Of a stretch of DNA of 64,000 bases, positions 694 through 61,204 are shown piece by piece. A model generated the notes under the pieces. That model searched no databases and was not told the DNA's origin. It saw nothing but the letters and a program-made list of their open reading frames with translations. Source of the DNA: Octopus sinensis (taxonomy: Eukaryota); the NCBI RefSeq assembly GCF_006345805.1, contig NC_043018.1, forward strand, positions 9,796,001-9,860,000, written 5' to 3'. The position numbers were made by a program, and so were the translations under genes. Position 1 is the stretch's first letter, and each line of letters begins with the position of its first letter.

Positions 694-724
<31 letters not shown>

Positions 725-2338: not shown

Positions 2339-2388
<50 letters not shown>

Positions 2389-40134: not shown

Positions 40135-40307
40135 CTCTTTCAACACCAACTGGCGGCTAAACATTCCTTGTACTATTCCACCACAAGACTTGGCCGTAAT
40201 CTTAAAGACCGCTGCACCAAAAGCGATCAAGATCGAGATATTCTTCAAGCAATGTTGGACCAACTGAAAAACAAGTGGAACCTTGTTCGATCTGTTGTCT
40301 CTAAAAG
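40135..40307 (+). CDS. MACF1/DST: Spectraplakin exon 14 (LFQHQLAAKH...KNKWNLVRSVVSK), phase 0-2
   Basis: Long pyrimidine tract + CAG, AG|GTAAGA donor; follows a 13.3-kb intron. Confidence 0.93.
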
Positions 40308-43300
40308 GTAAGACATTTAAAAAAGCTGTGATAAGACATGTCATATGATGTGTCATAATATCATTTTATTTGGTCTTAAGTATCTAGTACATTATTCACT
40401 TGGTGTTTTCTTTTACAGGTTTTTTTTTTCTTTTTCATATGACAACCCATAGCTTATTATTGCTGTCTTGCCTTAAAGGTATTGTTAGCTGATTCCTTGC
40501 AACCTGTACATGATAAACTGTTACCTATTGTTACATTGAATGTAGCCCTTATACAATAGCCTATAGCCTATTGTTGAGAGAATTTATTGTTGGTAGCCTA
40601 TTGTTAGTTGATAGCTTGCAAATTCAAGCTATTGCTAACTTGTAGCCTGCAGCTTTTCCTTGCATTACAGTTTGTAACCTATTGCTGCTTTCAGCCTATT
40701 CTTACACAATAGGCTGTAGTTTCTTGTTGACGATAACAATAATTTTATTGGAGCGGAAATAACCATGACTCCTCCTGTTAACGCTGCCTACCCTCTGATC
40801 TGTGCCATGAAGCAGAGAAACACTTACTTCAGAGGAGACATACAAACAGCCTGACCCAACACCTGTTCTTAGAGGACATTGACTAGTTTTATTTCAGCCC
40901 ATCATCACCACCACATTTCCAGGTCATGTCCAAAATGAAGAGTTTTTTTTTACCATTTTTATATCCAAAGCAAAGAGCATGTGTCAGTTATAGGGTGTTA
41001 CTCAAGGAACAAAAGATACATAATACGTAACTAATTACCGATATAGTGTCACTAGATGACCATTAGGGAGAACATCTAAGTACCAACATACTAGATGACT
41101 TAGATTATTTAACTACCAATATATTGTCACTAGATGACTGCTAGAGAGGACTTCAACAACCAATATAGTGCTACCTAGACTAATTGATTAGATTTCCAAT
41201 AATCTTCAATATTATATTGACAATATCTGTTTAGATTTACTCTCTAATTTCATAACCTTGATGATAAATTAATTGGTTTCTCTCAGAAATGTCTAGTACA
41301 CATTTCTTGTTATCATTTCCATGATTCTCATTACCGTTTCCATATTTCTTTTGTTCCATTCTTCAATTGAAATCTGCGACAGTTTTATACAATTAAGATC
41401 CTTTTCTCCATTGATTTGTCCGTCGTTGGTAATTAAACCGCCTTTTATGTTGTCATAAACACACTTGAAATTACTTTGAGACCGCAATTTAATGCAGATC
41501 GGATCTGTATATGAAACGATGACGGCTGTTTAAGACTGGTTCACACAATGTGTTATGAATATTTATAAACAAGCTGACAATAACAGCAACAGAAATAAAC
41601 CTGTGAAGCAAAGCTTTCAGCAAAACAAAACCCAGATTCTTTATTGTTAGTACATATTGTTGTTATATTGTATATACGTATGTTGTTTACTGCATTGTGC
41701 TTTGTAACAAAGTATGTGTGTGTGTGTGTGTGTGTGAGAGACTGCTGCTCGTTATTAGGTATATAGATGAATGAAATGATTAGGATAGTTTCAATGGAAT
41801 ATATTTCTCTGTTAATGTGTTTAATTCTTGATAAACCAGTCGTAATCTATAATGTTGTGGAATTTTTGTGAGCAGATAGTTTCCCACTAAGAGGACTCCG
41901 TGTAGTCAGCTGGGAAAAACTGCAGGAAAAGAATGAACTGAAATGTTAGAAACGTGTTAAACAATGAGAATCTTTTGATGGGGGAAGGTTTTATGGTGGA
42001 GTGGTTATGGTGTTGCTCTTGCGGTTCGTAGGATTCAATTCTCAGATCGGACATTGTGTTCTCAAGCAAGGTACTTCATTTCACATTGCCTCTGTAAACT
42101 CAGCTGAAAATGAACAGCTGTGGCATCTGGGGATGAGGGTGGGGAGCAGTGGTGGGGGTTTAATTCTGTGACAGACTAGTGTCCTTTACAGGGGTGGTGG
42201 TAGTGGTGGTGGTGGAGTTTTAGACCTTTGATCTGGATTCCTTGTTATCTGAATAAGCCTCAAAGGAAATATCTTTTGATGTTGAGTTGTGAAAAAAAAT
42301 TTCTGGTAAGAAATCTGTTTCCTAACCACTTGGTTCCAGGTTTCAGTCCCACCGTGTGGTCGCAGTCTAATGACTGAAACACGTAAATGAACACAGACAC
42401 ACACACATGCATCTTTTATTCTTTTATCTGTTTCAGTCATTTGACTGCATCCATGCTGGAGCACCACCTTGAAGGGTTCTAGTCGAATAAATTGACCCCT
42501 GGGACTTTTTTAAAGCCTAGCACATATTCTGTCGGTCACTTTCACCAAGTCATGAGGATGTAACCATACCAACACCGATTTTCAAGTAGTGAGAGAGGAC
42601 AAAAACACACACACATACACAACGGGCTTCTGTCTACAAATCCATTCACAAGGCTTTCGTTGGTCTGAGGCTATAGTAAAAGACACCTGCTTAAGCAAGT
42701 TTCTTACCACTCAGTCATGCCTGCACCTATATATGAAGACACTTGTTGAAGGTGCTTGGAACTTGAATTTAATATCGCAAGTTGTGAGACTGATTCTGTT
42801 TCAGTTTCAGAACCTGACAATCAAAAAAAAAAAAAGTCCATCTCCTCTACAACCTGTATCGAGCACTCTCTGCATTGTCCAACACAAACCAATAGTATGT
42901 GTGTGTTTGTGAGAGAGGGAGAGCTGCAAAAATGAAGTGAGTCAGTCATAATAACGAAGGAGAGGAGAAAAGGAACGAGAGAAGGAGAGTAAAGAGGGAC
43001 GACTTTTCAAATCTGCAACATGTAGTTTGTAAATGGGGGAGAGAAATTCTTTGTCAAAGAAGAAATGGTTCTGCTTTGAACTGCCGAACGAAGACAACCA
43101 TTTGTCACCAAAACTAAATTCAAGGGTAGATTGGAATTGGGAAAGTTGAAGAAATGCTGCAAAGCGACTCTAAGGGACACGGGATCAAATCGAAGCAAAG
43201 ATCCCGGTAAAAAGAATAACGACAATTCAAGCTTGAAGCAGAAAATGAACAATCGCTGAGCTGAAGCCAGAATAAACCCCATCATTTTTGATGGGTACTA

Positions 43301-44699
43301 CACCATTAGAGAGAAAGAGAGAGAAGGGGAGGGATCGAGCTAAAAAGCTTTGGACAGCCTTGTAAGGGTTCAACCATGCGTTTATGGAGTGTCTTTGCGG
43401 TAGGTGACTGCCATCTGTCTGCCCACTAACTCGTGGATTACGTGTGCTCCGTAGGAATGTTCGTTCCTCCTTTCAAAACTAAATATTAAATGAATGCGTG
43501 TGGCAGGAAGAGGAGAGAGAAATATTTTAAATATCAAGGACTTAGAAAGCCTTCATTAAGCACAGTCTTTTGCACAACAACTTCGTTGTATTCTCTCTTA
43601 CACACCTTTGTTCTCTCTCTCCCTCTCTTACACCTTTCTTCTCTCTCTTACAAATCCTCTCTCTCGCGCACAGACCTCTCTCTGACACACACCTTTCTTC
43701 TCTCTCCCTCTCTCTTACAAATCCTCTCTCTCTCGCACAGACCTCTCTCTGTCACACACACACACAGCGACATTTCTATATAAACTAGTTTAGCTAGATT
43801 TTACAAGCTGACAGACAAGATCTGTCCAACTTGATGTTTAATATCATCAAGTTGTTTACTTTCTAGTTAATCAAAGCAGAAAAGGAAAAAAAAGGAAGAA
43901 AAAAAAAGGAAGGTAAAAAGCCGTCATAATGACACAGCTTGCCAAATATGGTAGTCCTTACCTACTGGCCATAATAACGTATGATGACTGACAAATGCGG
44001 GCTGTTGCTTTCTCCCCTCCTCTGCACCCTTTTCCACCACACATCACCCTCACCTCTCTCTCTCTCTCTCTCTCACTTCACATTCTTTTCCACCCGCTTT
44101 CCCCCTCTCTCCCTTTATCTATTTCCTCTATCACCTGCCCTTCCTTTGCTTAACCTGTTGCCCCGTTCAATAGAAAGATACCTGTTATTACGAGTCCCTA
44201 CTAAAGAGATAGATAGATAGGTATATAGATAGATTGATAGATAGGTATATATGTTTCTTTATTAGCCACACAGGGCTGCACACAGACAGAACAAATTACA
44301 AGGTAGAGCTTTTCTTTTGGGGGTAAAAAAAAGGGGTTGGTTTTCGATCAAAAGGGATCGTAAAAGGAAAGAAAGATAGATAGATAGATCTTCTACTCTG
44401 TTGCTTCACCTGTTAGACATAGCAGCCAAATTACTTGCAATCTCAGTATTTTTTTATTTATTAAGATAAAAAGGGCATCGTACATAATGGCAGTCTTTGA
44501 TATATATATACTCCCTAAAAGATCTTTTCTAATCCTTATTTTAGCCCGCGTAATACTAGTTGATAGGGCGTAAATAAATATTTCTCCTGAACTTTTTAGA
44601 GGATGGTTACAGGTGGAACACTTTTAATCAATGGTCAACTTTATCAAGACTAATCAACAACTCTATAAGCAAACAGTTGGGGGCTGGCGGCTATTCATT

Positions 44700-44997
44700 T
44701 AGCTTGCTAAACAGCATAAAGTTTTTGGTACACTAACTCGTCTTAGCTGGACAGGTTAGTGTCTGTGTGTGAGTGTGAGTGAGAGAGAGAGAGAGAGTGA
44801 GAGTGAAAGATCGCAGTGAGTGAGTGACATTTCTCCATTGCTTTTACCTGTGATTGTATGTAAAGGTGTAAGAGGGCGGTAAGGTAGACGACGTCGCCGG
44901 AGGAGAAGACACCGCCGCCGCCATCATCATCATCATCACCATCGCCACATAGTTGCCGCTTTTAATATTCTCTCTCCTTCTCTCGGGGAAAAAAGTT
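44700..44997 (+). promoter_or_regulatory. Candidate internal promoter / 5'UTR
   Basis: (GT)/(GA) tracts, local CpG enrichment (gacgacgtcgccgg, ccgccgccgcc), (CAT)n, no SINEs; upstream of the candidate first exon. Confidence 0.45.
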
Positions 44998-45077
44998 ATG
45001 GATGACGGCAGTTACCCTACCAGCAACTCTGCAGATTACGAATTCCTCGTTTGGCCGAATGTCGACACAAGTTATAG
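44998..45077 (+). CDS. Candidate alternative first coding exon (MDDGSYPTSNSADYEFLVWPNVDTSY), phase 2
   Basis: ATG-initiated 26 codons + AG|GTAAAG donor, in phase with exon 15; preceded by CpG-rich, TE-free sequence. Confidence 0.65.
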
Positions 45078-47669
45078 GTAAAGATTAAAAAAAACAAACA
45101 AAACAAATACACACACGGGTAAAAAAAAAAAAAAACATCAAACAATGGCTTTTAATAATTAGTAGCAATTAATTATAACGAGAAGACACTAATACAAAAC
45201 TTTCTTCTAATCTTTTTTGATTACTAATTTCCGTCTATTAAACTGTTTTGGTTCGCATTCCTCTCTCTCTCACTTTTTACTGTTACGGAAGTATTTTATT
45301 TTATTTTAAAATCTATTTATCGATGTTTTATTTAAAAAAAATGTTAACCGTTCTTTAAAAAGTAACATCTGGTTTATATATATATAAACTTTTAATTAAA
45401 TATGAATTAAAATCTCAAGCAAAAACGTCCTGGAAACTTTCGACGTTCGCTTTTTAATTAAACAAGGTCATTGTTTTATACTTCCTAAATATTTATTTAA
45501 TTTAATAAATATATATCCTTAATTACATCAGTGTAATTAAGCAATCTCGGCTTTCACAACTTTCCACAGAGTTTCTCAATAAACTTTGGTTATTATAGTC
45601 TAAAGTTAAATTCACTCCTACCTGAAATTAACAACCTCTCAGACCCACGTTAAAACGATCCCAAGTGAATTTCGATATATAGAATGCCTTTATTTCTTGA
45701 TGTTTTTTCGCTTCCTATCTTTCAAATATTTTCTAATCCTTATTTTAGCCCGCGTAATACTAATTGGTAGGGCGTAAATAAATATTTCTCCTGAACTTTT
45801 CGTTGTAAAAACACTAAAATGGCGATGTCATTTTTGTCAATACAGGTGACCCGTTTCTCATTAACAGGTGTAACAACTCTTCAGCTTTTTCTCTAGCACT
45901 ATTGGAATTTCTGCTTAATTTAGCTCTACTAACCTGTCGTTATTTCTTTATAAAGCATCTCTGATTATATAATACGTGTGCATGTATGTGTGTGTGTGTA
46001 TATATATATATATGTATATATATTAAAGAATAAGTGTTTCGTTGTTTTAATTATAGTTGTTGTTGTTTAACCCTAGGTCAGTCCGGAACAAGTAAATTTA
46101 CGATTAAAGACATTCCACTCGTGACTGTCCGGTTTCCTTTTCAGGCATAGTCCATCTAGGACTACTTTATTCAGTGTGTCCTTGTTTATTCTCAGCTCAG
46201 TCTGATCAATCATGTCTATGATTAAAGGCGTTCCATCTGTGGCATTTCCGTATTTTCTCCACCCCCATCGCATAATATATCCCATGTCTTGTTTAACCCC
46301 TTAGTCAACACTGACCCGACACACAAACATAGGGCCATCATTAAGGACAGTCCGTCCGTGACCATCGGGTCTCTTCCATAGACAGAACTACTTTATCAGA
46401 CGTATTCTTCTATATATCTTTTCAAAGACGGAAGAATATAAGGAGATTTTGCTGCTATTTCTATGAAGCCAGATGACTTAATTGTAGTTCACCCTGTCAT
46501 TTCAGTGAAAACTCATTGTCAGTGTGTGTGTGTGTTGACATTCCAGCAAACAGTACTTGTATGACAATAAAACTACACACCTCATCAATCAGTTTAACAA
46601 CTCACAAACTATTTATCAGGTTACACACATCTACATACCTTCCTATCTATCTCTCTCTCTTTCTGATCAGTAGTTGACATTCAGTACAGTGCAGTTTCAT
46701 TAACTTTCTACCTGAGTACCTACCTGGGCCTTCCTTCTGACTATTTCTATTGCTACCGTACACACACACACACACACACACATACCATTGTCACTTTGTT
46801 TTAAAAAAACTCTCTAATGTTGTTATTGTTTATCTTGGCTGCTAGAAATATTTAACTTCCGATTACCTGAACATGTACCTGATCTACAACTGCTACACGC
46901 ATGCAACAAACACGCACTCTCAAACCTTGACAAATATAGAGGGTAGTTTGTCAGGGTATTCACTACCCTGGCCCAGCCCTGCTCTCTTTTCCTCCTCTCC
47001 CTATACTGTACACCCTCTTTCATTCCTACTGCAGGTAGCTGCTTCTCTATTCCTACACCGTGTGCTATTTTCTCCAAGTTACACACTGTATATCCCCTTC
47101 TCAAATTCCTGTTATATGTCCCCCTTTTTTCTGACCCCCTAATGTGCTCGGTATTTTTTCACCCCTACTATGTATACCTTCTTCTCCAAATTCTACATTG
47201 TGAAACCCTTTCTTACATTCCTACAATGCTCCTCACATCTCCCAGCCCCTCCTGCTCCATAATATGCTCTCCTTTCCCCAACCTTGCAATATGCACTTTC
47301 TCTATTCAGTTCCGTAGAACGCACTCCCTTTCTACGTCTTTCCAGCCATCACCCTTTTTACTGCAGCTGAAAAATACAGTTGAAGAACCACAGTCATTAT
47401 AAAGTATATCACAGACCAAATCAGTTATTTCTCAGAATTTGAAATGTTTTGAGTGAAATAATGTGAAATGTCATAACAGCCCACAATTCTCTCCTCTCCT
47501 GCCCTTCGTCTTTCTCACTTCTCAGAATGATCTCATCTGTTGTCTTTATTGCACCGTGTAACATGATTTTTGTCCTTGGGCAGTGACTGTTATTTCCAAT
47601 TTGCTGTCCCCTAGAAAGTATGAAAAATGGCTAATATTTCTTTCAGCCTTTGCTTTTGATCTGATATTT

Positions 47670-48053
47670 ATTCAAACCCCAAAGAATCCCTCTCAACACA
47701 TGGCTATGATGCTCCTCATTCAAACCCCAAAGGATCCCTCTCAACACATGGCTATAATGCTCCTTATTCAAACCCCAAAGGATCCCTCTCAACAAATGGC
47801 TATCATGCTCCTCATTCAAACCCCAAAGGATCCCTCTCAACACATGGCTATGATGCTCCTCATTCAAACCCCAAAGGGTCCCTCTCAATACATGGCTATA
47901 ATGCTCCTCATTCAAACCCCAAAGGATCCCTCTCAATACATGGCTATAATGCTCCTCTTTCAAACCCCAAAGGATCCCTCTCAACACATGGCTATGATGC
48001 TCCTCTTTCAAACCCCAAAGGATCCCTCTCAACACATGGCTATAATGCTCCTC
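47670..48053. repeat. 48-bp minisatellite, 8 copies
   Basis: Unit attcaaaccccaaaggatccctctcaacacatggctataatgctcctc. Confidence 0.95.
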
Positions 48054-48681
48054 TGCTACCCCTGCTCATGATTAGGTGGTCAAGGTCAAGCAACTGATAA
48101 GCAAATCTGTGGTGTTGAGCAAGAATATTTGCTATAACAACATTTCTGAACTTCAGCAACTCAGGTACTGAACCTGTCTGAAATGTAATGGAAAATTGGT
48201 CAGTTTCAAAACCTTGATGTCCAGGTCCCAAAAACACAGTTTGAAGGGAATTCTTGTCATTTCCTTTGATTTCTAGATAGAAACAATTGGAAATAACATT
48301 TACTGACCAAAGATGAAAAAAACGAAAGCTAAAACAAAAAATTTGTAACAGTGTTATTTAAGTTGTTCAGGATTTACCTGGTGCCCCACAGGTATAACAT
48401 ACAATGTATTTGTATATATGGTTTTATATGTCTGAATAGATGTATGTATGTGTGTGTGTGTATTCTTTTACTTGTCACAGTCATTTGACTGTGGCCATGC
48501 TGGAACTCCACCTTGAAGGGTTTTAGCTGAACAAAATTGACTCCAAAAAAACTTTTCTTTTTAAGCCCAGTACTTATTCTATCAGTCTCTTTTACTGTAC
48601 CACTAAGTTACAGGGATGTAAACACACCAACACCAGTTGTTAAGCAGTAATGGGGTCAATCACAGACACACAGAAACATGC

Positions 48682-48724
<43 letters not shown>

Positions 48725-49098
48725 GAGCTTCTTTCAGTTTCTATCTGTCGGATCTCAAAACGTTTTGGTCAACCTGAAGCTATAGTAGATGCCCTAGGCG
48801 CCACATAGTAGGACTGAACCCAGAACCATGTGGTTGAGAAGCAAGCTTCTTATCACACAGCCATGCCTGCACATATTATATTCTTTTATTACTTGTTTCA
48901 GTCATTTGACTGCGGCCATGCTGGAGCACCGCCTTTAGTTGAAGAAATCAATGCGAAGACTTATTCTTTGTAAGCTTATTACTTATTCTATCGGTCTTTA
49001 TTGCCGAACCGCATAGTTATGGGGACATAGACATACCCGCATCAGTTTTCAAGCGATGGTCGGGGGACAAATACGGGGACACACACACACACACATGC

Positions 49099-49139
<41 letters not shown>

Positions 49140-49439
49140 TGACGGGCTTTCAGTTTCCGTCTACCAAATCCACTCAAAAGGCTTTGGTTGGTCCAGAGCT
49201 ACAATAGAAGACAGTTGCTTTTAAGGTCCCACACAGTGGGACTTGAACCCAAAGCAGCATGGTTTGCAAAGGGAACTTCTTAAGCAACACTGTTATGTCT
49301 TTAGAATATTTCATTTTTGGATTTGGCTTGGAAAAATTCTTGACATGAACTTGTGTGTTGAAACAAATTTTGTTGTATCTTGGGTGGATCATTATGCCAA
49401 AATAAACACAGACACTGATTCAGTTTCACTTCTTTATTA

Positions 49440-49565
49440 TTAGTCAGTTGGTTAGTTATTTAACCAATCAAGAAATCAAAAGGACTTTGACAGGCAACTG
49501 ATTGTTTGACTGATTAAGCATTCAACCAATTCGTTAGTTGGTTAAATAACTGACCAATTGACTAA
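49440..49565. mobile_element. Small ~125-bp MITE-like element
   Basis: ~28-bp terminal inverted repeats with 2 mismatches (ttagtcagttggttagttatttaaccaa / ttggttaaataactgaccaattgactaa); TA dinucleotides near both ends. Confidence 0.55.
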
Positions 49566-50340
49566 GAATTAGGACGTGAAATTGAACCAGTGCTGCGTGT
49601 TTATTATTAGTGTAATTGACTGTCTCAAGATATATCAAAATAAGCTTATATATCAAATTACAGGAACAGTAAAATAATATGGCTAGAGAGAGCAGAGATT
49701 TGTGTTTTTTTTTGTTTATTTTTAAGTAAAGGCTTTCTTCAAGGTTGAAATAACTGGGTTAAGTAGGACATGACAAAAGTTTTCCATCCTCTGTGTTTGA
49801 GTGATTGGTTGCAGCTGATGGGGAACATAAAATGATTCTCAAGAAGAATTTTGTCTGAAACATTCTCTACAGCAATGTCACTACTGTTTCTCCTCATTTT
49901 TATCAAATAACACAAGTCTTGCCAACATTGACCACTAGTGGACTTCTTGGGACTTTGTTCTCTGCAGAGATGTGTGTAATAAAAACAGGGTCTGATGAAA
50001 CTAGTGATTAATCTGCAATTTACAAAACTTGTATAATGAAACTTGTGGTGATAAGAGAGTCCCTGATGAGAAAGAAAACTTTTCTTCTTTCCTCTTTTTC
50101 CTTTCTTTTTTCTTGTAACTTTCCACCTCTCTTTCCTCTCACCAATCCACATCAGCTTTTCACTTCTTGTTGTCATAACATTCACCTCTTTCCTACAATT
50201 TGAAGTCGAGCAATTCTGTCAGTCAATCTCTCTCTTTGATCTTTAATTACTTTTTTTTTCAGGTTTGAAAATTTCTCTTCACTTCTTTTACTCTTATGCT
50301 CTCCCTTCCTTACTCTCCTTCCTTTTACATATGTCTATAT

Positions 50341-50631
50341 GTGTGTGTATATATATATATTTTTTTATTCTGTACTTCCGGCTTCACTATTCTTTACAAC
50401 TCACATCCGTGGTGAGTTAACTTGGAAATTCAAAGCGACAGTGTAACCATCATCTAATTATGGTATTCTTGGCTAGCTAAGAAATGTGTGTGTGTATATA
50501 TATATATTTTTTTATTCTGTACTTCCGGCTTCACTATTCTTTACAACTCACATCCGTGGTGAGTTAACTTGGAAATTCAAAGCGACAGTGTAACCATCAT
50601 CTAATTATGGTATTCTTGGCTAGCTAAGAAA

Positions 50632-50660
<29 letters not shown>
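50341..50660. repeat. 147-bp tandem duplication bounded by (GT)n(AT)n
   Basis: tgtacttccgg at 50371 and 50518 with identical downstream sequence. Confidence 0.92.
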
Positions 50661-50662
<2 letters not shown>

Positions 50663-51125
50663 TTAAATAATAAGGGTGAAAAATTGAGTATTAATTTGAT
50701 TAATATCAATTTAAAACCAATGGCCTAGCACACACACACACACACACACATATAACCCATGCTGGCATGGGTTGTGTGTGTGTGTGTGTGTGCATTTGGT
50801 TGGGAAGCAAACTTCTTGATTATAAAATCATGCCTTCTTCGCCCCCCCTCCCCCTACATACACTTGGTGTTGTTGTGTGGTCCTTCGTGTTGCCCCAAAA
50901 CATTAAGTATTCCTTCGTCAGAGAGATTTAATTGGGTTTGGAAATGGTTGGTATTTTTTTTTGTGTGTATTTTCTTTGTATTTCATAGATTGTGGAATCT
51001 GCCGAATTCTACTTGGTGAAATTATTGATTACTAGTTAATTAATTAATTTTACCCTTTGTTATTATTGATATATATATATATATATATATAATTATTATA
51101 TATATATATATATATATATAATTAT

Positions 51126-51159
<34 letters not shown>

Positions 51160-52464
51160 TATGTATATATATATACAAGTTTGTGTGTGTGTATATATAT
51201 ACATATAATAATTATATATGTAATTATAACAAAGGATTGGCTATAAGCCTCTTGACGTGCTAGAAATAGATGCTTATCGCCAATCCCTTGTTATAATTAT
51301 GCATATAATTATCATATTTGTTGTATATATATTTTATGTGTACATATATGATCTGTATACATATTGTATGTGTATATGTATAATCTGTATGTATGTTGCT
51401 CTGTGTGTGAGTTTATATAAATAGTATGTGTGTACATGTATTATGTTGTGTGTGTGCGTGTGTGTATCATAGGAATGTGACCTGTATGCATATATATTGT
51501 GTGTGTGTGTGTGTGTGAATCTACTAAAACAATTGCTCTCAAACCCTGGCTGACATCAGTTTCCTCCTTTCCCTCCTGTGTATATACATATAAATGTGGT
51601 GAGAGATTCCTGTGTGATGACAGATGATGTTTTTGAATATATGGAGAGAGAGAGAAAGAAACAGGTGCTAATCCATAAACTGCTGTTTTTACTTATAATA
51701 TTCAACAAAGCTGTGAGTTGGCAGAATCGGCAAAGAACACCTTATGGTATTCTTTCTGGCGGTGAGCTGGCAGAAATGTTAGCACGCCAGGCGAAATGCT
51801 TAGCAGTATTTCGTCTGCCTGCCGTTACATTCTGAGTTCAAATTCTGCCGAGGTCGATTTTGCCTTTCATCCTTTTGGGGTTGATAAATTAAGTACCAGT
51901 TGAGTACTGGGGGCAATCTAATTGACTTTCCCCTTCCCCCAAAATTTCAGGCTTTGTGCCTATAGTAGAAAGGATTATTATTATTGGCAAGTACCAGTTA
52001 CGCACTGAGGTTGATATAATCGACTTAATCTGTTTGTCCTTTCTGTGTTTTGCCCCTTGTGGGTAGTAAAGAAATAGGTATTTTTTCTGACTGTTTACTC
52101 TGAGTTCCAATCCTGCCCAAGGTCAACTTTGCCTTTTATTCCTTTCCCTATCCCACCCCTCCCCTCCCCAGGGCTGATACAATAAAGTACCACTCAAGTG
52201 GTGGGGGTGGGGGTTGATGGCATCACCTGAACCCTGCCCCTTCCTTCTTAAAATTTTCAGGTCCTGGACCTAAATCAAAAACAACTATGAAGAAGGTGCA
52301 AGAGTGGCTGCGTGGTAAGAAGCTTGCTTTTGAACCACATGGTTCTGGGTTCAGTCCCACTGCGTGGCACCTTGGGCAAGTGTCTTCTGTTATAGCCTCA
52401 GGCTGATCAAAGCCTTGTGAGGGGATTTGGTAGACGGAAACTGAAAGAAGCCTGTCATGTATAT

Positions 52465-52500
<36 letters not shown>

Positions 52501-53624
52501 CTGTATGTCTTTGTGCCTATATTTGCCCCCCACCACTGCTTGACAACTGGTGCTGATGTTATGTCCCTGTAACTTAGCAGTTTGGTAAAAGAGACTGATA
52601 GAATAAGTGCCAAACTTTGAAAAATAAAGTCAATATATAGATGGTGCAGGAGTGGCTGTGTGGTAAGTAGCTTGCTTCCCAACCACATGGTTCCGGTGCC
52701 ACCTTGAGCAAGTGTCTTCTACTATAGCCTCGGACCAACCAGAGCCTTGTGAGTGGATTTGGTAGGTGGAAACTGAAAGAAGCCTGTCGTGTATGGTATA
52801 TATATATATATATATACCATATGGTTGGTTACAAAGCAAATGTTTTGAGCACATGGGTATGTGTGTTTAACAATGGTGATTTCTAACATTGGTACAAGGC
52901 TACCAATGTTTGGAGAGAGAGAGAGAATGTGGTGGTGGCGAGACATAGTCACTTATATCAGCTTCAGTATTTGACTGGTATCATATTTCATGAATCTTGA
53001 ACAGAATTAAGGGCAAGTCAACCCAGGTGAGGTTTAAATTTAGATTGGAAAGCGATCAGAATTGCTAATCTTGTTCTCAGTTTCTGTCTGCTTCATTAAC
53101 ATTCTAGACAGACATTCGTTAATACAATGAATGTCTAATGAATCGCTGACCAAAATTAATAAATTCCTGCTTTCTTCAGTTGAAATTTATTTTAAAATCA
53201 CATTTTAAACTATATTAGGTCCTTCAAGTGCTATTGGTGGATGTATACAGGTGTGGCTGTATGGTAAGAAGTTCACTTCCTAACCACATGGTTCTGGGTT
53301 CAGTCCCATTGTGTGGCACCTTGAGCAAGTGCTTTTTACTATAGCCTTGGGCCAACTAGAGCCTTGTGATTGGATTTGGTTGACGGAAACTGAAAGAAGC
53401 TTGTCATATATATGTATAAATATCTGTGTGTGTCTTTCTGTCTGTATTTGTCTCCCATCACTGCTTGACAACCGGTGTTGGTGTGTTTACGTCCCTGTAA
53501 CCTAACAGTTCAGCAAGAGAGTCCTAGGGTCGATTTGCTTGACTAAACCCTTCAAGGCTGTGTCCCAGCATGGCCACGGTCAAATGACTGAAACAAAATA
53601 TAAAAGATATACACACGCATACAT

Positions 53625-53655
<31 letters not shown>

Positions 53656-54199
53656 ATACACTGTTTGATGGTACAAGTGTAATATATAGAATGTGTGCAC
53701 ACTTACATGCAGGTGTGTATGTGGTGATTTGCTGTACTTGAGAAGACGTGTCAAGCTAAGCAAACTCGCTGTCTTCCACACAAACAGGCTTGTTGTCCTT
53801 TACAGATGATGGTGCCATTTAAGAAGCCCCCATGCCGGTGAGTGCTGTGTTAATGCACCATTGCTGGAACTGCATTAATGCACTCATGTCAGTGCTGCAT
53901 AAATGCACCTGTGATGGTGATGTGTAAAAAGCACCCAGCACACTCTGTAAAGTGGTTTGCGTTAGGGAGGGCATCCTGCTGTAGAAACCATGCCGCAACA
54001 GACAGATGGGGTCTAGACAGCTCCCTTCTTCTACCCAGCTCCATATCAAACTGTCCAACCCATGCCAGTATGGAGGGCAGATGTTAAACGATGATGATGA
54101 TGATGGTATGTCTGTGTTTGCACGTTATTTCTATTAATATATTGTCTTTTTAGTTTATCGTTTTAAAGGAAAACTGTTTAAAAGTTGGAAATTAACACT

Positions 54200-57100
54200 T
54201 GAATCCCAGAAGATTATATTTAACTTTTTTTGTTACCATATTTCTACTGAAATGCACAGTTTTTATTAATTAACACATCCAATTTAACTTGGATGTGCTA
54301 TTAACATTAATGAAATATTTGCTTTACTGACTTGGTTAACAGGTGAACAATACAAAACACAGTGAACAGGTGAACAAAACCTTGCTAATACAGTTAATTA
54401 GTTCTTTAATATACATGGTTAACAAGTGAACTATACCTTAATAAACATGTTTAACAGGTGAACAATATTTGAATAAATGTGGTTAACATATGAACAATGC
54501 TTTGATAAACACATGTGCACAATACCTTAATAAACACAGCTAGCAGGAAAATACTACTTTAATGAATGTGGTCAATAGGTGAACAAAACCTTTCTCACTC
54601 AGTGAACAGGTGAACGAAGCCAAACAGTTTGTCCTGTTTGTTTCCAGTTGATTCATTAATTTATTTCCTTTGGTTAATTAATATCGAAGTCCTTCTTGTA
54701 CTAATTACCCAAATTTAGTGACAGTTTAATCAAGCCTATTACCTCTCCCTCCCCATCACTACTGTTTACTGCTATTTGCTCAGCAGAGCGAGTTGTTATG
54801 GTAACAAATGGGGGATATTCATCAAGAGATTAGTTGAATAAATAATAACGAGAGCTTATAATTAAAACTTGGTTGGTGTGTAGACTTGTATGGCAGGTGA
54901 GAAACTTGGGGGTGGGTGGTGGGGAATGAAATATATCTACTTTCATGTAATGTTGTTGTTGTTGTAAAGCCTCAGGTGATCCCTGATGGAATAGATCCAC
55001 AGCATGTAAATAAGACCTACATCTGATGTCTGTTGTTCCGAATATAATCCCAGCCTCAGTTTGGCTGAAGACCATTCTGCACTGAATGGTATGGAGTTGT
55101 ATGGCTGTGGGGTTAGGGAGTTCACTTCACAACCATGAGGTCTTGAGTTCAACCTCACTGTGTGGCATCATGGACCTCGGGCACATGGCATCTACTGTGG
55201 TGTTGGGTTGACCAAAGCCTTGCGAGTGAATCTGGTGGATGGAAACTTGTAGGACGCCTGTTGTGTGTGTGTGTGCATATATATGTGTGTGTGTGTATAT
55301 ATCATGTCATCATTTAATGTCCATCTTCTATGTATGCATGAGTAGAGTGGTCAACAGGAGCCCGGCCAGGTAGAAAATGTACCCTAGGCTAGTGTCTGTT
55401 TGGGTGGGGATTTTATGGCTGAATGCTCATCCTAACACCAACCACTCCCCAGATACATGTATGTGTATATATATATATATATATACACACACACCCACCC
55501 ACACCCATGTATGTGTCTATGTATATATACACATGTACATGTATATATACACGTGTGTATGTGTATATATATATATAATGTATATATATGTATGTATGTA
55601 TGTATATATCTGTATATGTATGTATATATCTATGTATGTATGTATATATATATATATGTGTATATATATATATATATATTATATATATATATATATTATA
55701 TATATATATATGTATGTATATAATACATACACACACAAAAATTGGTGCAGATTGGAGACAGGAAGAGGTTCCAGCTGTAAAACCCTACCTCAAGATCAAT
55801 TCCCATCCAATCCATGCTAGCATGGAACAAAGCTCCTGTGCTGGTGCCTTGTGAATTGGTTGGCATTAGGAAGGGCATCCAGCTGTAGAAACCTTACTAA
55901 AACAGACAATTGGCGCCTGGTGCAGCTCTCTGGCTGGTCAGCTCCTGTCAAACTATCCAACCCATGCCAGCATGAAAGATGGACATTAAATGATGATGAT
56001 GATGATAAACCAATTAGTAAATGGTTGTATAATATTCTGGAACAAACTGTGATGAGTTTTAAGAAACTACAAGACTGTTGTCCGGTTGATACCCAACCAC
56101 ACAGCACGGTCAACAGTTTGTTGCAGCAATACATTCGAGGCTGGATTAAAAGACAATTGATTCTCTTTGTGCAATCCAACCCTGCCCTCCCCTCTCTTGT
56201 GACCTTGACAGTGTCTAAATGACAATAAAGGTATAATGAGTGTTGTTTGTGAAATGATTGATTAACAATTCAATTTTCTTCCCGATCAGCTCCCCCACCT
56301 CCCCAGGCTTGATTTCATGACTGTATTGACCCTTTTGGTATTAACCTTTGTGAGACTGCCCCTGGTTCTATGATATAAGTTTCCTGCGCTCTCAACACAA
56401 TTCTAAGCCAGAATCAGAGTGATTGACATCATGTGACTATGTTAGGCCTTTTCATTTAACCCTTTTCGCACCAACCTACCTGAGACTGCTCACCCCACCC
56501 CCCTGTTCCATGATATCAGCTTCTTGTTTTAAAGTGATCTAAATTTAAACCTTCCATCAAATTTTCATGTTAATCCATGTTTCAAACCCCAGCTTCATAA
56601 AGAGATTATTTTACTAAAGTCTTTATTATTTTCAGATTTAAGTGAAACACAATAAGTGTATTATAACAGAAATATGGTAACAAAAAGGTTAAAGTAATTG
56701 AAATTAAAACCTTATGTTCCAAGCAGTAGCTTGATAATGACAGTTATTTTAATAAATTCTTTGTTTTCAAAATTAAATGAAACAAAAGCAGTTTATAAAT
56801 CAACTGTTAGTGATGGAAACAGCCTTTGTAACGGATATTAACTTGCACATCCAACTTTTCTTGGATGTGCTGTTTTGAACACCAAAGACTGCAGAAATCC
56901 TCCTTAGAAACCACTTTGTAAAGAGCTAAATAGCACAGAATATATTTGCAGATGAAATTTTACCAGCACCAGTGAATGGGGCTGTTGTATTACATGTATT
57001 ACAGCGTAATTTTTGCCTCATCAGCAGCAGATACCCAATCACGAAATGTGAGACTGCAATCTCTTGAAACCAATATAGTTTAACACTGACTAAACAGCCA

Positions 57101-57468
57101 GTGATGTTGCACAAAGCTGGTAGACTGTGTATAAATTAGCCATTAGCGACAGAAGCATCATTTGTAATGAATATTAATTAGAACATCCAACTTAACTTGG
57201 ATGTGTTGTTTCCAACATTGTAGACTGCAGTAATCATCTCGAGAAATCGTCTCTAAGAGAAGGTGCTGACAAGATTCCGTCAACCGATATATCTGTGCTT
57301 TTAATAGCATCTAATGTCTTTACACAAAGATTTCTCCAAACTATCACCGTAGGCTACAGCATTCAAAATAGCACATCCAAGTTAAATTGGATGTGTTAAT
57401 TAATAAAAAATGTGCATTTCAGCAGAAATATGGCAACAAAAATGTTAAATATAATCTTCTGGGATTCA
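54200..57468. repeat. ~100-bp inverted repeats 3.1 kb apart
   Basis: 54200-54302 and 57367-57468 are reverse complements with only a few differences; each has a CACATCCAA-N6-TTGGATGTG hairpin. Confidence 0.85.
56456..56692. mobile_element. piggyBac-type MITE family E (TTAA-CCC...GG-TTAA)
   Basis: TTAA at 56456-56459 and 56689-56692 with CCCTTT/AAA(A)GG ends; related copies about 11145-11365, 19300-19528, 19605-19840. Confidence 0.65.
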
Positions 57469-58585
57469 TAAACTAAGCACTATTCTATCTTTATTCATCA
57501 ATTTCCATTCCATGCTCTCTCCAAGACAATTCTTGTAACAAATCAGTGTTTTTTTTTCCTTTTTATGAAACGAAATGGATAAGAATAACTTGATTAATCT
57601 CTAACTTGATGAAGAATCAATCGCATTTATGAACCAAGAATAACTCTGTTTGACTACTCAAAAATAATGAATTATCAATGGATTTGGTTTACCATTGGGT
57701 GTGTGCATGTGTGTGTGTGCGTGTGTATATATATATATATATGTATGAGGCTAATTATGTGAATTTGTATACGGTATGTGTGTGTGAAGCACCAAAGGAT
57801 GTGTGTATATGAAGGTATTTCTTTGTATACACATATTGTGTATGGGTTGGAGTTTGGCACCAATAAATATATTGTATGTGAGGGGGGGTGTGTGTGTGTG
57901 TAATATGTAGGCATTTTTGTGCCCATATATGGTGTGTTGGTGGGAGTTTGATCCCAATAGATACCTGGACATGTGGATATCTGTATGTATATATATATAT
58001 ATATATAGATATATATATATATATGTGTGTGTGTGTGGTGTATGGGTGTTTGTTTAGAAGTCAGTGAGTTATCTGAGTTGTTTAGTCCCAGGTCGGTACT
58101 AGTCTAATAGACTTATGATGAAAGACATTCTAGCCATGGCCATTGTTGTTGTTTTTTTTATTTTTTGTATGTGATGGGGAACCCAGGAATACATAAATCC
58201 CGATGTGTTCTGTTTTTAAGATGGCAGGGCAAGATATGACAAAAATTTGGCTGCTATTTTTAGCGGGTTCAATAACTATAAAGAGGTTCCGTCTACGTGA
58301 TGACTGGCCTGTCATTTGTATGTATATGTGGTGGGTGGGTGGGGTGGTAATAATAATTACTCAGACATTTCTCACTACACTAGACCCTCCCTCTCCTCTC
58401 TCAGTCTATATATATCTTCAACTATAAATATTATATCATTGGGAGATCTTGCTAAATATATCTTCCACATTGATTAAATGGCCACAACTGAGGAAACTTT
58501 ATACCTTCTGGTCAGCCGAGTTAATTTATTTCTCAGCCAAATTACTAAGCACTTTTCTTAATATCACCATCATCGTCATCTAATC

Positions 58586-58985
58586 TCTTTACTCTTTTAC
58601 TTGTTTCAGTCATTTGACTTTGGCCATGCTGGAGCACTGCCTTTAGTCGAGCAAATCGACCCCAGGACTTATTCTTTGCAAGCCCAGTACTTATTCTATC
58701 GGTCTCTTTTGCCGAACTGCTAAGTTATGGGGACGTAAACACATCAGCATCGGTTGTCAAGCGATGTTGGGGGGAGGGGGACAAACACAGACACAAACAC
58801 ACACACACACATACATATATATATACATATATACGACGGGCTACTTTCAGTTTCTGTCTACCAAATCCACTCACAAGGCTTTGGTCGGCCCGAAGCTATA
58901 GCAGAAGACACTTTGCCCATGGTGCCATGCAGTGGGATTGAACCCGGAACCATGTGGTTGGTAAGCAAGCTACTTACCATTCAGC
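58586..58985 (-). mobile_element. SINE family B, second near full-length young copy
   Basis: Highly similar to 29447-29851 along its whole length apart from the internal microsatellite. Confidence 0.85.
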
Positions 58986-59884
58986 CAGTTTACTTTTTTA
59001 TGCTCATGTGGGTCAGATTGAATTCGTTGAGGCAGATCTTCTATGGTTGGATGCCTGTCATTGTTGCCAACCAAGGTACTGTTTCCCCATGGAAGACTGG
59101 AAATGAACAACCCCTCTTTTATGACAATGATGCATATTTACAACCATTGTATGACATCAAGAAAAGGGTTCACATAAACAGGCATTCCTTTGTATGTTGG
59201 GCTTCTTTCAGTTTCCATCTACAGAATCCACTTGCAATAGTTAGGTTGGTCGAGGGCTTTAATAGAATACCCTTTCCCCCAAATGCCATCCAGTAGGGCT
59301 GATTAGATTGCACCCACAGTTCTTATCTTTTATCCCTGGTATTTATTCTGTTGGTCCCTTTTGCAGAGCCATTCAGTTGTTGGGTACTTGGGGACTTCAC
59401 TGGTGTCGGTGCCACGTAAAAGAAAAAATCACCGAGTACCATTCTTTTAAGCTGTTGGAGTTAGGATGGATGTGAAGCTGTAGAAACCTTGCCCAAGCCG
59501 ACAGGGAACCTGACAGAGCCCTCTGGCTCGTCTCTGTTTGTCGAACCATCCAACCCATGCCAGCATGGAATAAAGCACATTGAATCATGATGATTTCAAA
59601 TTTTGGCACAAAGCCAGCAAGGTTTTTGTGGTAATGAAATTAGTCAATTACATCAACTCCAGTTTCACAACTGGTACTTATTTTATCGAATCGACCCTGA
59701 AAGGATGAGAGGCTCAGCTGACCTTGATGGGATTTGAACTTGGAATACCACAGGGAATGGGACATAAAACCAAAAATAAAATTCATTTTTCTAATGAGAA
59801 AGTTAATTAAGATTGTTTTGTAGATTTAAAGTGTAATTCATATTTATTCTGATTTTTTTTTTCTCTTTCTTTGTCCATTTTTAG

Positions 59885-60044
59885 CCAGAACAAACTAGAT
59901 GAAGCCCTGCTGACGTCTGGCCGCGTCTCTGATGCCCTAAATTCACTGCAGGAATGGCTGAGTAAAGCGGAAGCGATGCTGTCTAAAGACGAATGCATTC
60001 TTGGAGATTACGACACTGTAAATCTATTAATAGAACAACATAAG
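59885..60044 (+). CDS. MACF1/DST: Spectraplakin exon 15 (QNKLDEALLTSG...LIEQHK), phase 2-0
   Basis: Q.KL.EALL.SG..DAL..L..WL motif; phase 2 matches exon 14 (AG+C=Ser) across a 19.6-kb intron. Confidence 0.95.
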
Positions 60045-61042: not shown

Positions 61043-61204
61043 TCAGTGCAACAAGAACTGGAAGCTCGGGAACAAACTTTGGAAGCCTTGAAGTCTGCTG
61101 GAAGCATCCCTGAACAACACATTGAGGATCTGGTATTTCTATGGAAACGGATTAATTTATTGAGTGAAAGTCGAGAGGCTCGTTTAAAGGAGGCATTAAC
61201 TTTG
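61043..61204 (+). CDS. MACF1/DST: Spectraplakin exon 16 (SVQQELEARE...RLKEALTL), phase 0-0
   Basis: ttttcAG acceptor, GTAAAT donor, 162 nt open; gene continues past the window. Confidence 0.9.

What the first reader, a model, noticed from the sequence alone, without database searches (positions are those of the whole stretch)
44700..45077. Internal promoter and alternative first exon predicting a short C-terminal spectraplakin isoform
Seen: inside the 19.6-kb phase-2 intron lies an ATG-started 80-nt exon ending AG|GTAAAG, the exact phase needed to join exon 15 (…TSYS-QNKLDEALL). It is preceded by a CpG-enriched, SINE-free stretch. Known: spectraplakins end in a few spectrin repeats, EF-hands and a microtubule-binding GAR domain. 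Inference: a mini-spectraplakin lacking the actin-binding, plakin and most rod domains, a microtubule-only regulator made from an internal TSS.
Basis: partly seen in the sequence, partly recalled or inferred. Interest (0 to 1): 0.8.

Follow-up and report, generated by a model that had tools for sequence, protein, structure and literature searches.

The report
Possible internal start of octopus spectraplakin
Inside a long intron of an octopus cytoskeletal-linker gene lies a small conserved CpG-rich patch carrying a start codon and splice signal that could produce a short, microtubule-binding-only protein, but no octopus transcript evidence was available to prove it.

Summary
ATG 44998, an 80-nt open frame and the donor AG|GTAAAG at 45077/45078 lie in a 19,577-nt phase-2 intron (40308-59884) of an Octopus MACF1/Shot-type spectraplakin gene, and they fit exon 59885-60044 in frame. 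The ORF, donor and phase pattern alone is not beyond chance: the donor is weaker than 17 of 20 real donors, and 54 equally good ATG/donor combinations exist in the intron.

Other evidence makes the site special:
- It is the only non-repeat, non-exon CpG-rich patch in the 64-kb window and in the 103-kb O. bimaculoides locus.
- 14 of its 16 CpGs are retained between the two octopuses, against 48% elsewhere in the intron (P=0.003). This suggests a germline-unmethylated island of the kind found at octopus TSSs.
- ATG, ORF and donor are conserved in O. bimaculoides.
- No usable acceptor lies upstream.
- A gastropod RNA contig carries an analogous CpG-rich, ATG-containing segment. It is spliced to the same acceptor in the same phase and opens a 743-aa ORF with spectrin repeats, EF-hands and a GAR domain.

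Against the interpretation: no Octopus transcript or annotation was found, the peptide shows no coding-type constraint, and the gastropod contig also contains upstream exons. Verdict: a plausible (about 50%) internal promoter and first exon.

The parts
44998..45077 (+). Candidate alternative first coding exon. ATG plus 26 codons plus AG, phase 2, peptide MDDGSYPTSNSADYEFLVWPNVDTSY(S).
   Evidence: The orthologue is at L002 55421-55500 with ATG, ORF and donor intact, 3 of 80 nt different (S5N, N10T) and all 5 CpGs conserved.
45078..45083 (+). Candidate 5' splice site GTAAAG (context TAG|GTAAAG).
   Evidence: It scores 5.2 bits on a matrix from 20 real O. bimaculoides donors. That is below 17 of the 20, and 69 of 1258 decoy GTs in the intron score as well. 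It is identical in O. bimaculoides.
44817..45100 (.). CpG-rich, single-copy island around and upstream of the ATG. This is the putative unmethylated promoter or TSS region.
   Evidence: CpG o/e is about 1.0, against 0.40 for the window. It is the only non-repeat, non-exon CpG peak in the window and in the 103-kb O. bimaculoides locus. 14 of 16 CpGs are conserved, against 77 of 160 in the rest of the intron, Fisher P=0.003.
44760..44812 (.). (GT)n/(GA)n microsatellite at the upstream edge of the island. Its length differs between the two octopuses.
44910..44941 (.). (GCC)4(ATC)5 trinucleotide repeats inside the island. They supply several of its CpGs. O. bimaculoides has a 6-nt indel here.
40135..40307 (+). 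Constitutive exon '14' (LFQHQLAAKH..NLVRSVVSK+AG), donor AAG|GTAAGA.
   Evidence: It matches P0159 residues about 1338-1398.
40308..59884 (+). The 19,577-nt phase-2 intron that holds the candidate. It is the only phase-2 intron among 20 mapped in the O. bimaculoides orthologue.
59885..60044 (+). Exon '15' ((S)QNKLDEALL..IEQHK), the shared acceptor exon. It begins a spectrin repeat.
   Evidence: The protein is identical in O. bimaculoides despite 17 synonymous differences. The exon boundary is conserved across many animals.
61043..61204 (+). Exon '16' (SVQQELEAREQ..KEALTL).
44848..44942 (-). Mirror-image candidate on the opposite strand of the same island. An ATG-started 95-nt open frame (MVMMMMMAAAVSSPPATSSTLPPSYTFTYNH+AG) ends at CAG|GTAAAA. 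It could be a divergent transcript or a coincidence.
   Evidence: The donor is conserved in O. bimaculoides. No nested gene is annotated in L002.

Best explanation
The segment from about 44817 to 45077 is an intragenic, germline-unmethylated CpG-island-type promoter with its first exon, lying inside the only phase-2 intron of an Octopus spectraplakin (MACF1/Shot) gene. Transcription would start in the island. If the start lies downstream of about 44860, the AUG at 44998 is the first one. The exon would splice from 45077 to the normal acceptor at 59885. The product would be about 690 aa: a 27-residue unique head, the last three spectrin repeats, the EF-hand pair, the GAS2/GAR microtubule-binding domain and the Ser/Thr/Pro-rich tail. 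It would lack the actin-binding, plakin and most rod domains.

Shown:
- the sequence anatomy;
- the conserved CpG-retaining island;
- conservation of ATG, ORF and donor in a second octopus;
- absence of an upstream acceptor;
- the domain content of the downstream part;
- an expressed analogue in a gastropod.

Inferred: the TSS, the splice 45077 to 59885, translation, and the microtubule-only function.
For: 1. Anatomy and phase. The intron is the only phase-2 intron of 20 mapped.
2. CpG island. CpG o/e is about 1.0 in a gene body at 0.40. It is the only unique, syntenic, non-exon CpG peak in the 64-kb window and the 103-kb O. bimaculoides locus.
3. CpG retention. 14 of 16 CpGs are conserved, against 77 of 160 in the rest of the intron (P=0.003). 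Non-CpG identity is only slightly higher, 91.7% against 88.7%. This is the signature of long-term hypomethylation. Octopus methylated genes lack methylation at the TSS (PMC9476566).
4. ATG, open frame and GTAAAG are identical in O. bimaculoides. The exon is 96.2% identical, against an intron median of 90%.
5. No credible 3' splice site lies in or just upstream of the island. Scores there are at most 0.5 bits, against 2.4-14.8 for real acceptors. This argues against an internal cassette exon.
6. Gastropod RNA contig L001 (Logan SRR23441711). A 193-nt CpG-rich segment (o/e 0.99) carries an ATG at position 700 and the peptide MNDDDSGGEYPFNSRSS..SSS. It is joined in phase 2 to QNKLDEALL and opens a 743-aa ORF with spectrin repeats, EF-hands and GAS2. 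Genomic contig L005 of the same species shows an ordinary AT-rich intron and acceptor directly upstream of that exon, so the segment really is spliced on.
7. In that gastropod, GC3 falls from 0.75 to 0.43 and CpG o/e from 0.84 to 0.43 exactly at the exon 14/15 junction. This is compatible with a separate, germline-active transcription unit starting in this intron.
Against: - No Octopus RNA evidence could be reached.
- The exact predicted O. bimaculoides 693-aa isoform is not in the 15-billion-protein collection.
- The RefSeq name of XP_052831648.1 carries no 'isoform X' suffix, and only one gene is called across L002.
- The donor is weak and many equally good ATG/donor/phase-2 combinations exist in the intron.
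- A candidate of this quality falling within a 350-bp island is expected by chance roughly once in four (derived).
- The substitutions between the two octopuses fall at codon positions 2, 2 and 3 and cause two amino-acid changes and no synonymous change. Real exon 15 has 17 synonymous and no amino-acid changes.
- About 30 other intronic blocks are equally conserved.
- The similarity to the gastropod peptide is not significant: shuffle P is 0.25 for local and 0.09 for global alignment, and the peptide ranks 3rd of 214 ATG peptides in the intron.
- In the gastropod contig the segment follows exon 14 and starts with GTTAGG. It may therefore be an exon-14 extension or a cassette with a premature stop, not a first exon.
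- The opposite strand of the island offers an equally good ATG-plus-donor candidate.
Confidence: 0.5

Rival explanations
1. The island is a real conserved unmethylated regulatory element: an intronic enhancer, an orphan CpG island, or the TSS of a non-coding or antisense transcript. The ATG, 80-nt frame and GTAAAG donor are then coincidental and no short spectraplakin is made.
For: - CpG retention and uniqueness of the island hold whatever the ORF does.
- The donor is weak and such ORF/donor combinations are common.
- The peptide shows no coding-type constraint.
- The minus strand has a mirror ATG plus CAG|GTAAAA candidate.
- Conserved sequence extends well beyond the exon, to 45141-45560.
- There is no annotated isoform.
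Against: - A gastropod expresses an ATG-bearing, CpG-rich exon spliced to exactly this acceptor in this phase.
- ATG, frame and donor are all intact in both octopuses.
- No nested gene is annotated on either strand, and no long ORFs lie nearby.
Confidence: 0.3
2. The segment is an internal alternative exon, either a cassette or 'poison' exon or an alternative 5'-splice-site extension. It would be included in transcripts from the upstream promoters, as the gastropod contig literally shows. It would bring in a stop codon that truncates or down-regulates the long isoform. The downstream ORF would be translated rarely, if at all.
For: L001 contains exons 10-14, then the 193-nt segment with an in-frame stop at 672-674, then exon 15 onward. 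In Octopus, any read-through from exon 14 into this region also meets stops.
Against: - In Octopus no acceptor scores above 0.5 bits within the island. The best one upstream, at 44613, scores 4.3 bits and is 385 nt away.
- The de Bruijn contig cannot tell a cassette exon from a first exon that overlaps or adjoins exon 14. The segment begins GTTAGG, which looks like the intron start after exon 14.
Confidence: 0.1
3. The site is a chance ORF and chance GT in neutrally evolving intron, and the CpG richness is a by-product of (GCC)n/(ATC)n microsatellites.
For: - The null counts of candidates are high.
- Microsatellites lie inside the island.
- The two octopuses are too close for ORF conservation to mean much. 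The probability of at most 3 differences in 80 nt is 0.016-0.035, and about 10% of intronic 100-bp windows are as conserved.
Against: - CpG retention is 88% against 48% (P=0.003). It includes 5 of 5 CpGs inside the ORF, outside the microsatellite.
- It is the only such unique syntenic patch in about 100 kb.
- There is a gastropod analogue.
Confidence: 0.1

Closest known systems
Internal-promoter short isoforms of dystrophin (Dp260, Dp140, Dp116, Dp71) and of nesprin-1/2
   Same: These are giant spectrin-repeat genes. A promoter with a unique short first exon sits inside an intron and splices in frame to the common downstream exons. The product keeps only the C-terminal functional module (own knowledge; nesprin variants PMC3388047 and Dp71 PMC13305302 were listed).
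   Different: Those isoforms have mapped TSSs, cDNAs and proteins. Here only sequence features, two-species conservation and a gastropod contig exist. The retained module is EF-hand, GAR and tail (microtubule binding), not a dystroglycan- or KASH-binding end.
Known spectraplakin isoforms (MACF1a1-3, MACF1-4, MACF1b, MACF1c; dystonin a/b/e; Shot A-D; VAB-10A/B)
   Same: It is the same gene family. Alternative promoters and first exons that give different lead peptides are the rule in this family.
   Different: All described N-terminal variants still keep the plakin domain and/or the whole spectrin rod. None of the reviews read describes a natural isoform made only of the last 3 spectrin repeats, EF-hands and GAR. 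The nearest thing is the artificial Shot 'EGC' or C-tail construct.
GAS2 / GAS2-like proteins
   Same: They are small proteins whose microtubule binding rests on a GAR domain plus an EB1-binding tail. Functionally, this is what a mini-spectraplakin would resemble (own knowledge; spectraplakins are described as Gas2-like family members).
   Different: GAS2-like proteins are separate genes and carry a CH domain in front of the GAR. They have no spectrin repeats or EF-hands.
Unmethylated CpG islands at transcription start sites within methylated gene bodies
   Same: The site has a local CpG o/e of about 1 in a depleted gene body. CpGs are retained between species. Octopus methylated genes lack methylation at the TSS (PMC9476566).
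   Different: The island is short (about 280-350 bp) and its G+C is 46-49%. The methylation state was not measured. Intragenic islands can also be enhancers or non-coding TSSs.

Membership tests
Spectraplakin (MACF1/dystonin/Shot/VAB-10) host gene | Long rod of spectrin repeats | tested here: met
   The window's + strand exons match O. bimaculoides XP_052831648.1 and A0A0L8H113 closely, and exons 15-16 are identical. Pfam Spectrin hits on the orthologue.
Spectraplakin (MACF1/dystonin/Shot/VAB-10) host gene | C-terminal EF-hand pair followed by a GAS2/GAR domain | tested here: met
   On the O. bimaculoides orthologue, downstream of the window: EF-hand_7 at 391-451 and GAS2 at 475-543 (E=2e-30) of the predicted 693-aa product. 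These domains are not inside the 64-kb window itself.
Spectraplakin (MACF1/dystonin/Shot/VAB-10) host gene | N-terminal calponin-homology actin-binding domain and plakin domain | not tested
   These lie upstream of the window and of locus L002. The RefSeq model is only the C-terminal 2065 aa.
Alternative-promoter first exon (Dp71-type short isoform) | Exon with its own ATG that joins the common exon in frame | tested here: met
   80 nt ending in phase 2. The intron is phase 2 and the junction reads TSY-S-QNKL.
Alternative-promoter first exon (Dp71-type short isoform) | No 3' splice site upstream, so the exon is a first exon and not internal | tested here: met
   Acceptor matrix built from 20 real sites. 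Nothing scores above 0.5 bits in 44817-44997, and the best upstream site is 4.3 bits at 44613.
Alternative-promoter first exon (Dp71-type short isoform) | Functional 5' splice site | tested here: inconclusive
   TAG|GTAAAG scores 5.2 bits, within the real range of 4.0-13.6 but below 17 of 20 real donors. 5.5% of decoy GTs score as well. It is conserved in O. bimaculoides.
Alternative-promoter first exon (Dp71-type short isoform) | Mapped transcription start and spliced transcript | not testable with these tools
   No Octopus RNA data were reachable. The exact-sequence look-up of the predicted isoform was negative. The word-index protein searches returned no Octopus proteins at all.
Alternative-promoter first exon (Dp71-type short isoform) | Conservation of the exon in other lineages | tested here: inconclusive
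   It is conserved in O. bimaculoides, but without a coding signature. A positional analogue is expressed in a gastropod, but the peptide similarity is not significant and its first-exon status is unresolved.
CpG-island-type unmethylated promoter | Local CpG o/e well above the background, more than 200 bp long | tested here: met
   o/e is 0.93-1.07 over 260-350 bp, against 0.40 for the window. G+C is 46-49% against 37.5% for the window, which is below the classical vertebrate 50%.
CpG-island-type unmethylated promoter | Protection of CpGs from decay over evolutionary time | tested here: met
   14 of 16 CpGs retained against 77 of 160, Fisher P=0.003.
CpG-island-type unmethylated promoter | Measured absence of methylation, open chromatin, and promoter activity | not testable with these tools
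   This needs the published O. bimaculoides WGBS/RRBS tracks (PMC9476566) or ATAC/CAGE data.
Cassette or poison exon | Both a 3' and a 5' splice site flank the exon | tested here: not met
   There is no credible acceptor in Octopus. The gastropod contig leaves this open for that species.

The most novel reading that the evidence does not exclude
Molluscs, at least octopods and heterobranch gastropods, share an ancient intragenic CpG-island promoter in the single phase-2 intron of their spectraplakin gene. It makes a 'mini-spectraplakin' of about 700 aa: a short acidic/Ser-rich head, 3 spectrin repeats, EF-hands, a GAR domain and an EB1-type tail. This would be a natural counterpart of the artificial Shot-EGC fragment and a Dp71-like isoform for this family. 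In the gastropod, the compositional break in GC3 and CpG at this intron suggests that the short unit is the germline or broadly expressed one.
Probability: 0.35. Interest if true: 0.6.

Novelty: new variant of a known kind. Interest (0 to 1): 0.45.

Why it matters
Spectraplakins are studied as actin-microtubule cross-linkers, and their isoform diversity is described as N-terminal variation that keeps the rod. A natural isoform with only the last spectrin repeats and the EF-GAR-tail module would be a microtubule/EB1 regulator uncoupled from actin. It could act on its own or compete with the long forms. It would also confound C-terminal tags, antibodies and knock-outs. If the isoform is shared by cephalopods and gastropods, it would be an old feature of the gene. 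It would then be worth looking for at the homologous intron of shot, vab-10, MACF1 and DST. If the site is only a regulatory island, it is an ordinary intronic element.

Tried and rejected
1. Word-index protein searches: alt exon plus exons 15-16; the N-terminus of gastropod P0024; gastropod exon 14 plus extension. They returned only single-exon genomic read-through ORFs from other animals and no Octopus proteins. They therefore say nothing about expression.
2. Exact look-up of the predicted O. bimaculoides short isoforms (693 and 571 aa) found nothing.
3. Rfam and tRNA scans of the whole window found nothing.
4. The idea that the 75-bp direct repeats (44522-44596 and 45726-45800) are LTR-like ends of an inserted element carrying the 'exon' was rejected. 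The left copy is missing at the orthologous O. bimaculoides site, while everything between the repeats is syntenic.
5. A retrocopy with a poly(A) tail (the A-run at 45122-45136) has no support. No ORF or homologue was found, the A-run varies in length between species, and the region is single-copy and syntenic.
6. A nested protein-coding gene on the minus strand is unlikely. No convincing ORFs were found in 40.3-47 kb and none is annotated in L002.
7. P0040/L003 was considered as a second example. It is a genomic contig whose 197-aa ORF is merely contiguous with exon 15, so it is uninformative.
8. Retained intron as the explanation of the gastropod insert was rejected. The genomic sequence upstream of exon 15 (L005) is different and AT-rich.
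9. An upstream/downstream CpG shift was looked for in Octopus and is absent: 0.40 against 0.37.
10. Literature searches for a natural C-terminal-only spectraplakin isoform found none.

Full report
**What is there**

The + strand of the window carries a run of spectrin-repeat exons.

A HMMER search of 1.84 billion representative proteins with the hypothetical junction peptide found P0018. P0018 is O. bimaculoides A0A0L8H113. [quoted passage not shown] This protein closely matches the window's exons and is identical over exons 15-16. It carries the constitutive junction ..NLVRSVVSK-S-QNKLDEALL...

The genomic locus of that protein is L002, CM046622.1:30,691,085-30,793,890. It is collinear with the window at 83-91% nucleotide identity. 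The window is therefore from another Octopus species, and the gene is a spectraplakin.

The literal observation is right:
- exon 14 is 40135-40307 and ends ..AAA AG|GTAAGA;
- the intron is 40308-59884, 19,577 nt, phase 2;
- the candidate runs from ATG 44998 to 45077 (80 nt, MDDGSYPTSNSADYEFLVWPNVDTSY plus AG), followed by GTAAAG;
- exon 15 starts at 59885 with the C that completes AGC = Ser.

**Is the pattern more than chance?**

By itself it is not.

- The intron holds 425 ATG-started open frames of 30-400 nt that end at a GT in phase 2. With a generic donor matrix, 15 of them have a donor at least as good as this one.
- I mapped 20 real splice junctions of the O. bimaculoides orthologue and built Octopus-specific matrices from them.
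- On the donor matrix the candidate TAG|GTAAAG scores 5.2 bits, below 17 of the 20 real donors.
- 69 of 1258 decoy GTs in the intron score as well, and 54 ATG/donor/phase-2 combinations are as good.
- This intron is the only phase-2 intron among the 20 mapped (16 are phase 0, 3 are phase 1). The phase match is still only a one-in-three event.

**What makes the place special**

*CpG richness.* The window has CpG o/e 0.40. The segment 44751-45100 has 17 CpGs and o/e 0.93, and its peak 200-bp bin is above the 99th percentile.

*Uniqueness.* Eleven such peaks exist in the window. All the others are minisatellites, repeats, lineage-specific insertions or known exons. Only the candidate and known exons are both single-copy and syntenic.

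*Same result in the other octopus.* In the 103-kb O. bimaculoides locus, 11 peaks reach the 98th percentile and only three are non-repeat. One is a stretch with no counterpart in the window. One is the last coding exon. One is the orthologue of the candidate, L002 55201-55600, with 18 CpGs and o/e 1.03.

*CpG retention.* In 44817-45100, 14 of 16 CpGs are still CpG in O. bimaculoides. In the rest of the intron the figure is 77 of 160, and in the rest of the window 207 of 452 (Fisher P=0.003 against the rest of the intron). Non-CpG identity is only slightly higher, 91.7% against 88.7%.

Selective protection of CpGs is what long-term absence of germline methylation produces. O. bimaculoides has gene-body methylation in a subset of genes, with the TSS and promoter left unmethylated in a large class of them (PMC9476566). 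The island is thus a good candidate for an intragenic TSS or other unmethylated regulatory element.

Part of the island is microsatellite ((GT/GA)n and (GCC)4(ATC)5). However, the five CpGs inside the ORF lie outside these repeats and all five are conserved.

**Conservation of the exon**

In O. bimaculoides the ATG, the open frame and AG|GTAAAG are all intact at L002 55421-55500. Three of the 80 nt differ.

This is weak evidence, for two reasons:
- The median identity of 100-bp intronic windows is 90%, the 90th percentile is 95%, and about 30 other blocks in this intron are as conserved.
- The three differences fall at codon positions 2, 2 and 3 and give two amino-acid changes (S5N, N10T). Genuine exon 15 shows 17 differences, all synonymous.

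The constraint therefore looks like constraint on DNA, not on a peptide. With three changes, though, nothing can be concluded.

**First exon or internal exon?**

An acceptor matrix built from 20 real sites finds nothing above 0.5 bits in 44817-44997, while real acceptors score 2.4-14.8. The best site further upstream scores 4.3 bits at 44613. Every read-through from exon 14 into this region meets stop codons.

In Octopus the segment is therefore either a first exon or not an exon at all.

**Evidence from another mollusc**

The representative search also returned P0024 (743 aa). It starts MNDDDSGGEYPFNSRSSRLSSSNVSSSGSSS and continues QNKLDEALL.. through spliced exons to EF-hands, a GAS2 domain and a tail.

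*Source.* P0024 comes from Logan RNA contig L001 (SRR23441711, 6657 nt). The source organism is not identified. The closest named homologues of the query are from the gastropods Plakobranchus (78%) and Candidula.

*The inserted segment.* In L001 a 193-nt segment (599-791) lies between the exon-14 equivalent and exon 15. It has 58% G+C and CpG o/e 0.99. It contains a stop in the exon-14 frame at 672-674 and an ATG at 700 that reopens the frame in phase 2.

*It is really spliced on.* Genomic contig L005 is from the same species, since its exon 15 is identical. It shows an ordinary AT-rich intron end..ttattatttaatgcacag|CCAGAAC, directly upstream of exon 15. The segment is therefore spliced to the normal acceptor and is not a retained intron.

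*The constitutive form also exists.* A second contig, L006, is also from this species. It differs from L001 only at three clustered A/G sites, and it has the constitutive junction.

*What this shows.* A mollusc from another class expresses a CpG-rich, ATG-bearing segment from the same intron, joined to the same exon in the same phase. It opens an ORF with the same domain content as the one proposed for Octopus.

*Two cautions.*
- The segment follows exon 14 in the contig and begins GTTAGG, which looks like the start of the intron after exon 14. It may adjoin exon 14, either as a distal 5' splice site or as a first exon overlapping exon 14. A de Bruijn contig cannot tell an internal TSS from inclusion in long transcripts.
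- The peptide similarity (M-DD..G-YP..NS..NV..S) is not significant. Shuffle P is 0.25 for local and 0.09 for global alignment, and the peptide ranks 3rd of 214 ATG peptides in the intron and 38th of 1316 in the window.

*An unexpected supporting detail.* In the gastropod coding sequence, GC3 drops from 0.75 to 0.43 and CpG o/e from 0.84 to 0.43 exactly at the exon 14/15 junction. This looks as if the 3' part belongs to a different methylation or transcription domain. Octopus shows no such shift.

**What the product would be**

Adding the O. bimaculoides head peptide to the downstream 666 aa gives 693 aa. Pfam finds three spectrin-repeat stretches, an EF-hand pair (391-451) and GAS2 (475-543, E=2e-30), followed by a Ser/Thr/Pro/Arg-rich tail of about 150 aa. 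Exon 15 begins a spectrin repeat, so the truncation falls at a module boundary.

**Negative evidence**

- The exact 693-aa and 571-aa predicted sequences are not in the 15-billion-protein collection.
- Only one gene is called in L002 and nothing is annotated at the island.
- The RefSeq name of the protein has no 'isoform X' suffix.
- The word-index searches returned no Octopus proteins at all, so their silence is uninformative.
- The same island offers a mirror candidate on the minus strand: ATG 44942 down to 44848, then CAG|GTAAAA. This shows how easily such patterns arise, or hints at divergent transcription.

**Comparison with what is known**

The reviews read list N-terminal promoter variants only: Shot A-D; MACF1a1-3, MACF1-4, MACF1b and MACF1c; dystonin a/b/e; VAB-10A/B. 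All of these keep the rod. None of the papers read describes a natural isoform of only the last repeats plus EF-GAR. The nearest thing is the experimental Shot EF-GAR-Ctail fragment.

The closest known mechanism is the internal-promoter short isoform of other giant spectrin-repeat genes, such as dystrophin Dp71 and the short nesprins (and own knowledge). If real, this is a new variant of a known kind.

**Verdict**

- About 0.8: the island is a functional unmethylated element.
- About 0.5: it is a promoter whose first exon splices 45077 to 59885 and encodes the short isoform.
- About 0.3: it is a regulatory or non-coding TSS element with a coincidental ORF.
- About 0.1 each: an internal alternative exon, or pure chance.

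Interest is moderate (0.45). The decisive data are octopus RNA-seq or Iso-Seq junctions, CAGE, and the existing methylome.

Noticed in passing
window 44522-44596 and 45726-45800: A 75-bp direct repeat at 96% identity brackets the candidate region. The left copy is absent at the orthologous O. bimaculoides position and only the right copy is present (L002 56128-56203). The left copy is therefore a lineage-specific local duplication or insertion and not an LTR pair.
   Followed up: yes
window 44848-44942, minus strand: A mirror-image candidate first exon lies on the opposite strand of the CpG island. It is ATG-started, 95 nt long, ends in phase 2 and is followed by CAG|GTAAAA. It is conserved in O. 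bimaculoides. It may reflect divergent transcription or be a coincidence.
   Followed up: partly
L006 (gastropod mRNA contig) 169-4422, junction at about 2274: There is a sharp compositional break exactly at the exon 14/15 junction. GC3 is 0.75 and CpG o/e 0.84 upstream, against 0.43 and 0.43 downstream. Octopus shows no such break. The cause is unexplained; it may mark a methylation or transcription-unit boundary.
   Followed up: partly
L001 169-172 versus L006: The two gastropod RNA contigs are identical over about 2.7 kb except for three clustered differences, G in L001 and A in L006 (FLKHFG versus FLRRFG). This looks like an A-to-I editing cluster or a polymorphism.
   Followed up: no
window about 4040-4300 (+); L002 18404-19461: The spectrin-repeat exon DIRQTQENTVIQ..KFQVTIDV is missing from the O. 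bimaculoides RefSeq and UniProt models. The orthologous place is a 1058-N assembly gap. The gastropod protein P0158 contains the equivalent segment. Those octopus gene models therefore lack an exon.
   Followed up: partly
window 59885-60044 versus 61043-61204: Exon 15 has 17 synonymous differences in 160 nt from O. bimaculoides with an identical protein, and 5 of its 7 CpGs have decayed. Neighbouring exon 16 has only 3 differences in 162 nt. The silent-site rate is very uneven.
   Followed up: no
window 5353-5866 and 6044-6557: Two tandem copies both align to a single O. bimaculoides segment (L002 21046-21561). This is a lineage-specific tandem duplication of about 690 bp rich in (TG/TA)n.
   Followed up: no
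window 14388-14870 (+): A 161-aa ORF resembles the C-terminal part of a non-LTR retrotransposon reverse transcriptase (my reading of the translation; it was not searched against any family library). It is CpG-rich and absent from the orthologous O. bimaculoides position, so it is a young lineage-specific insertion.
   Followed up: no
L003 3459-4397 (unidentified invertebrate genomic contig, SRR23372228): A 197-aa acidic/Asn/Ser-rich ORF runs without a stop from inside the homologous intron straight into the QNKLDEALL exon. It could be a 5'-extended exon in that species or a chance ORF.
   Followed up: partly
L002 splice map: Of 20 mapped introns in the octopus spectraplakin C-terminal half, 16 are phase 0, 3 are phase 1 and only the 20-kb intron 14 is phase 2. 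The boundary before QNKLDEALL recurs in the single-exon genomic ORFs from many other, unidentified, animals.
   Followed up: partly
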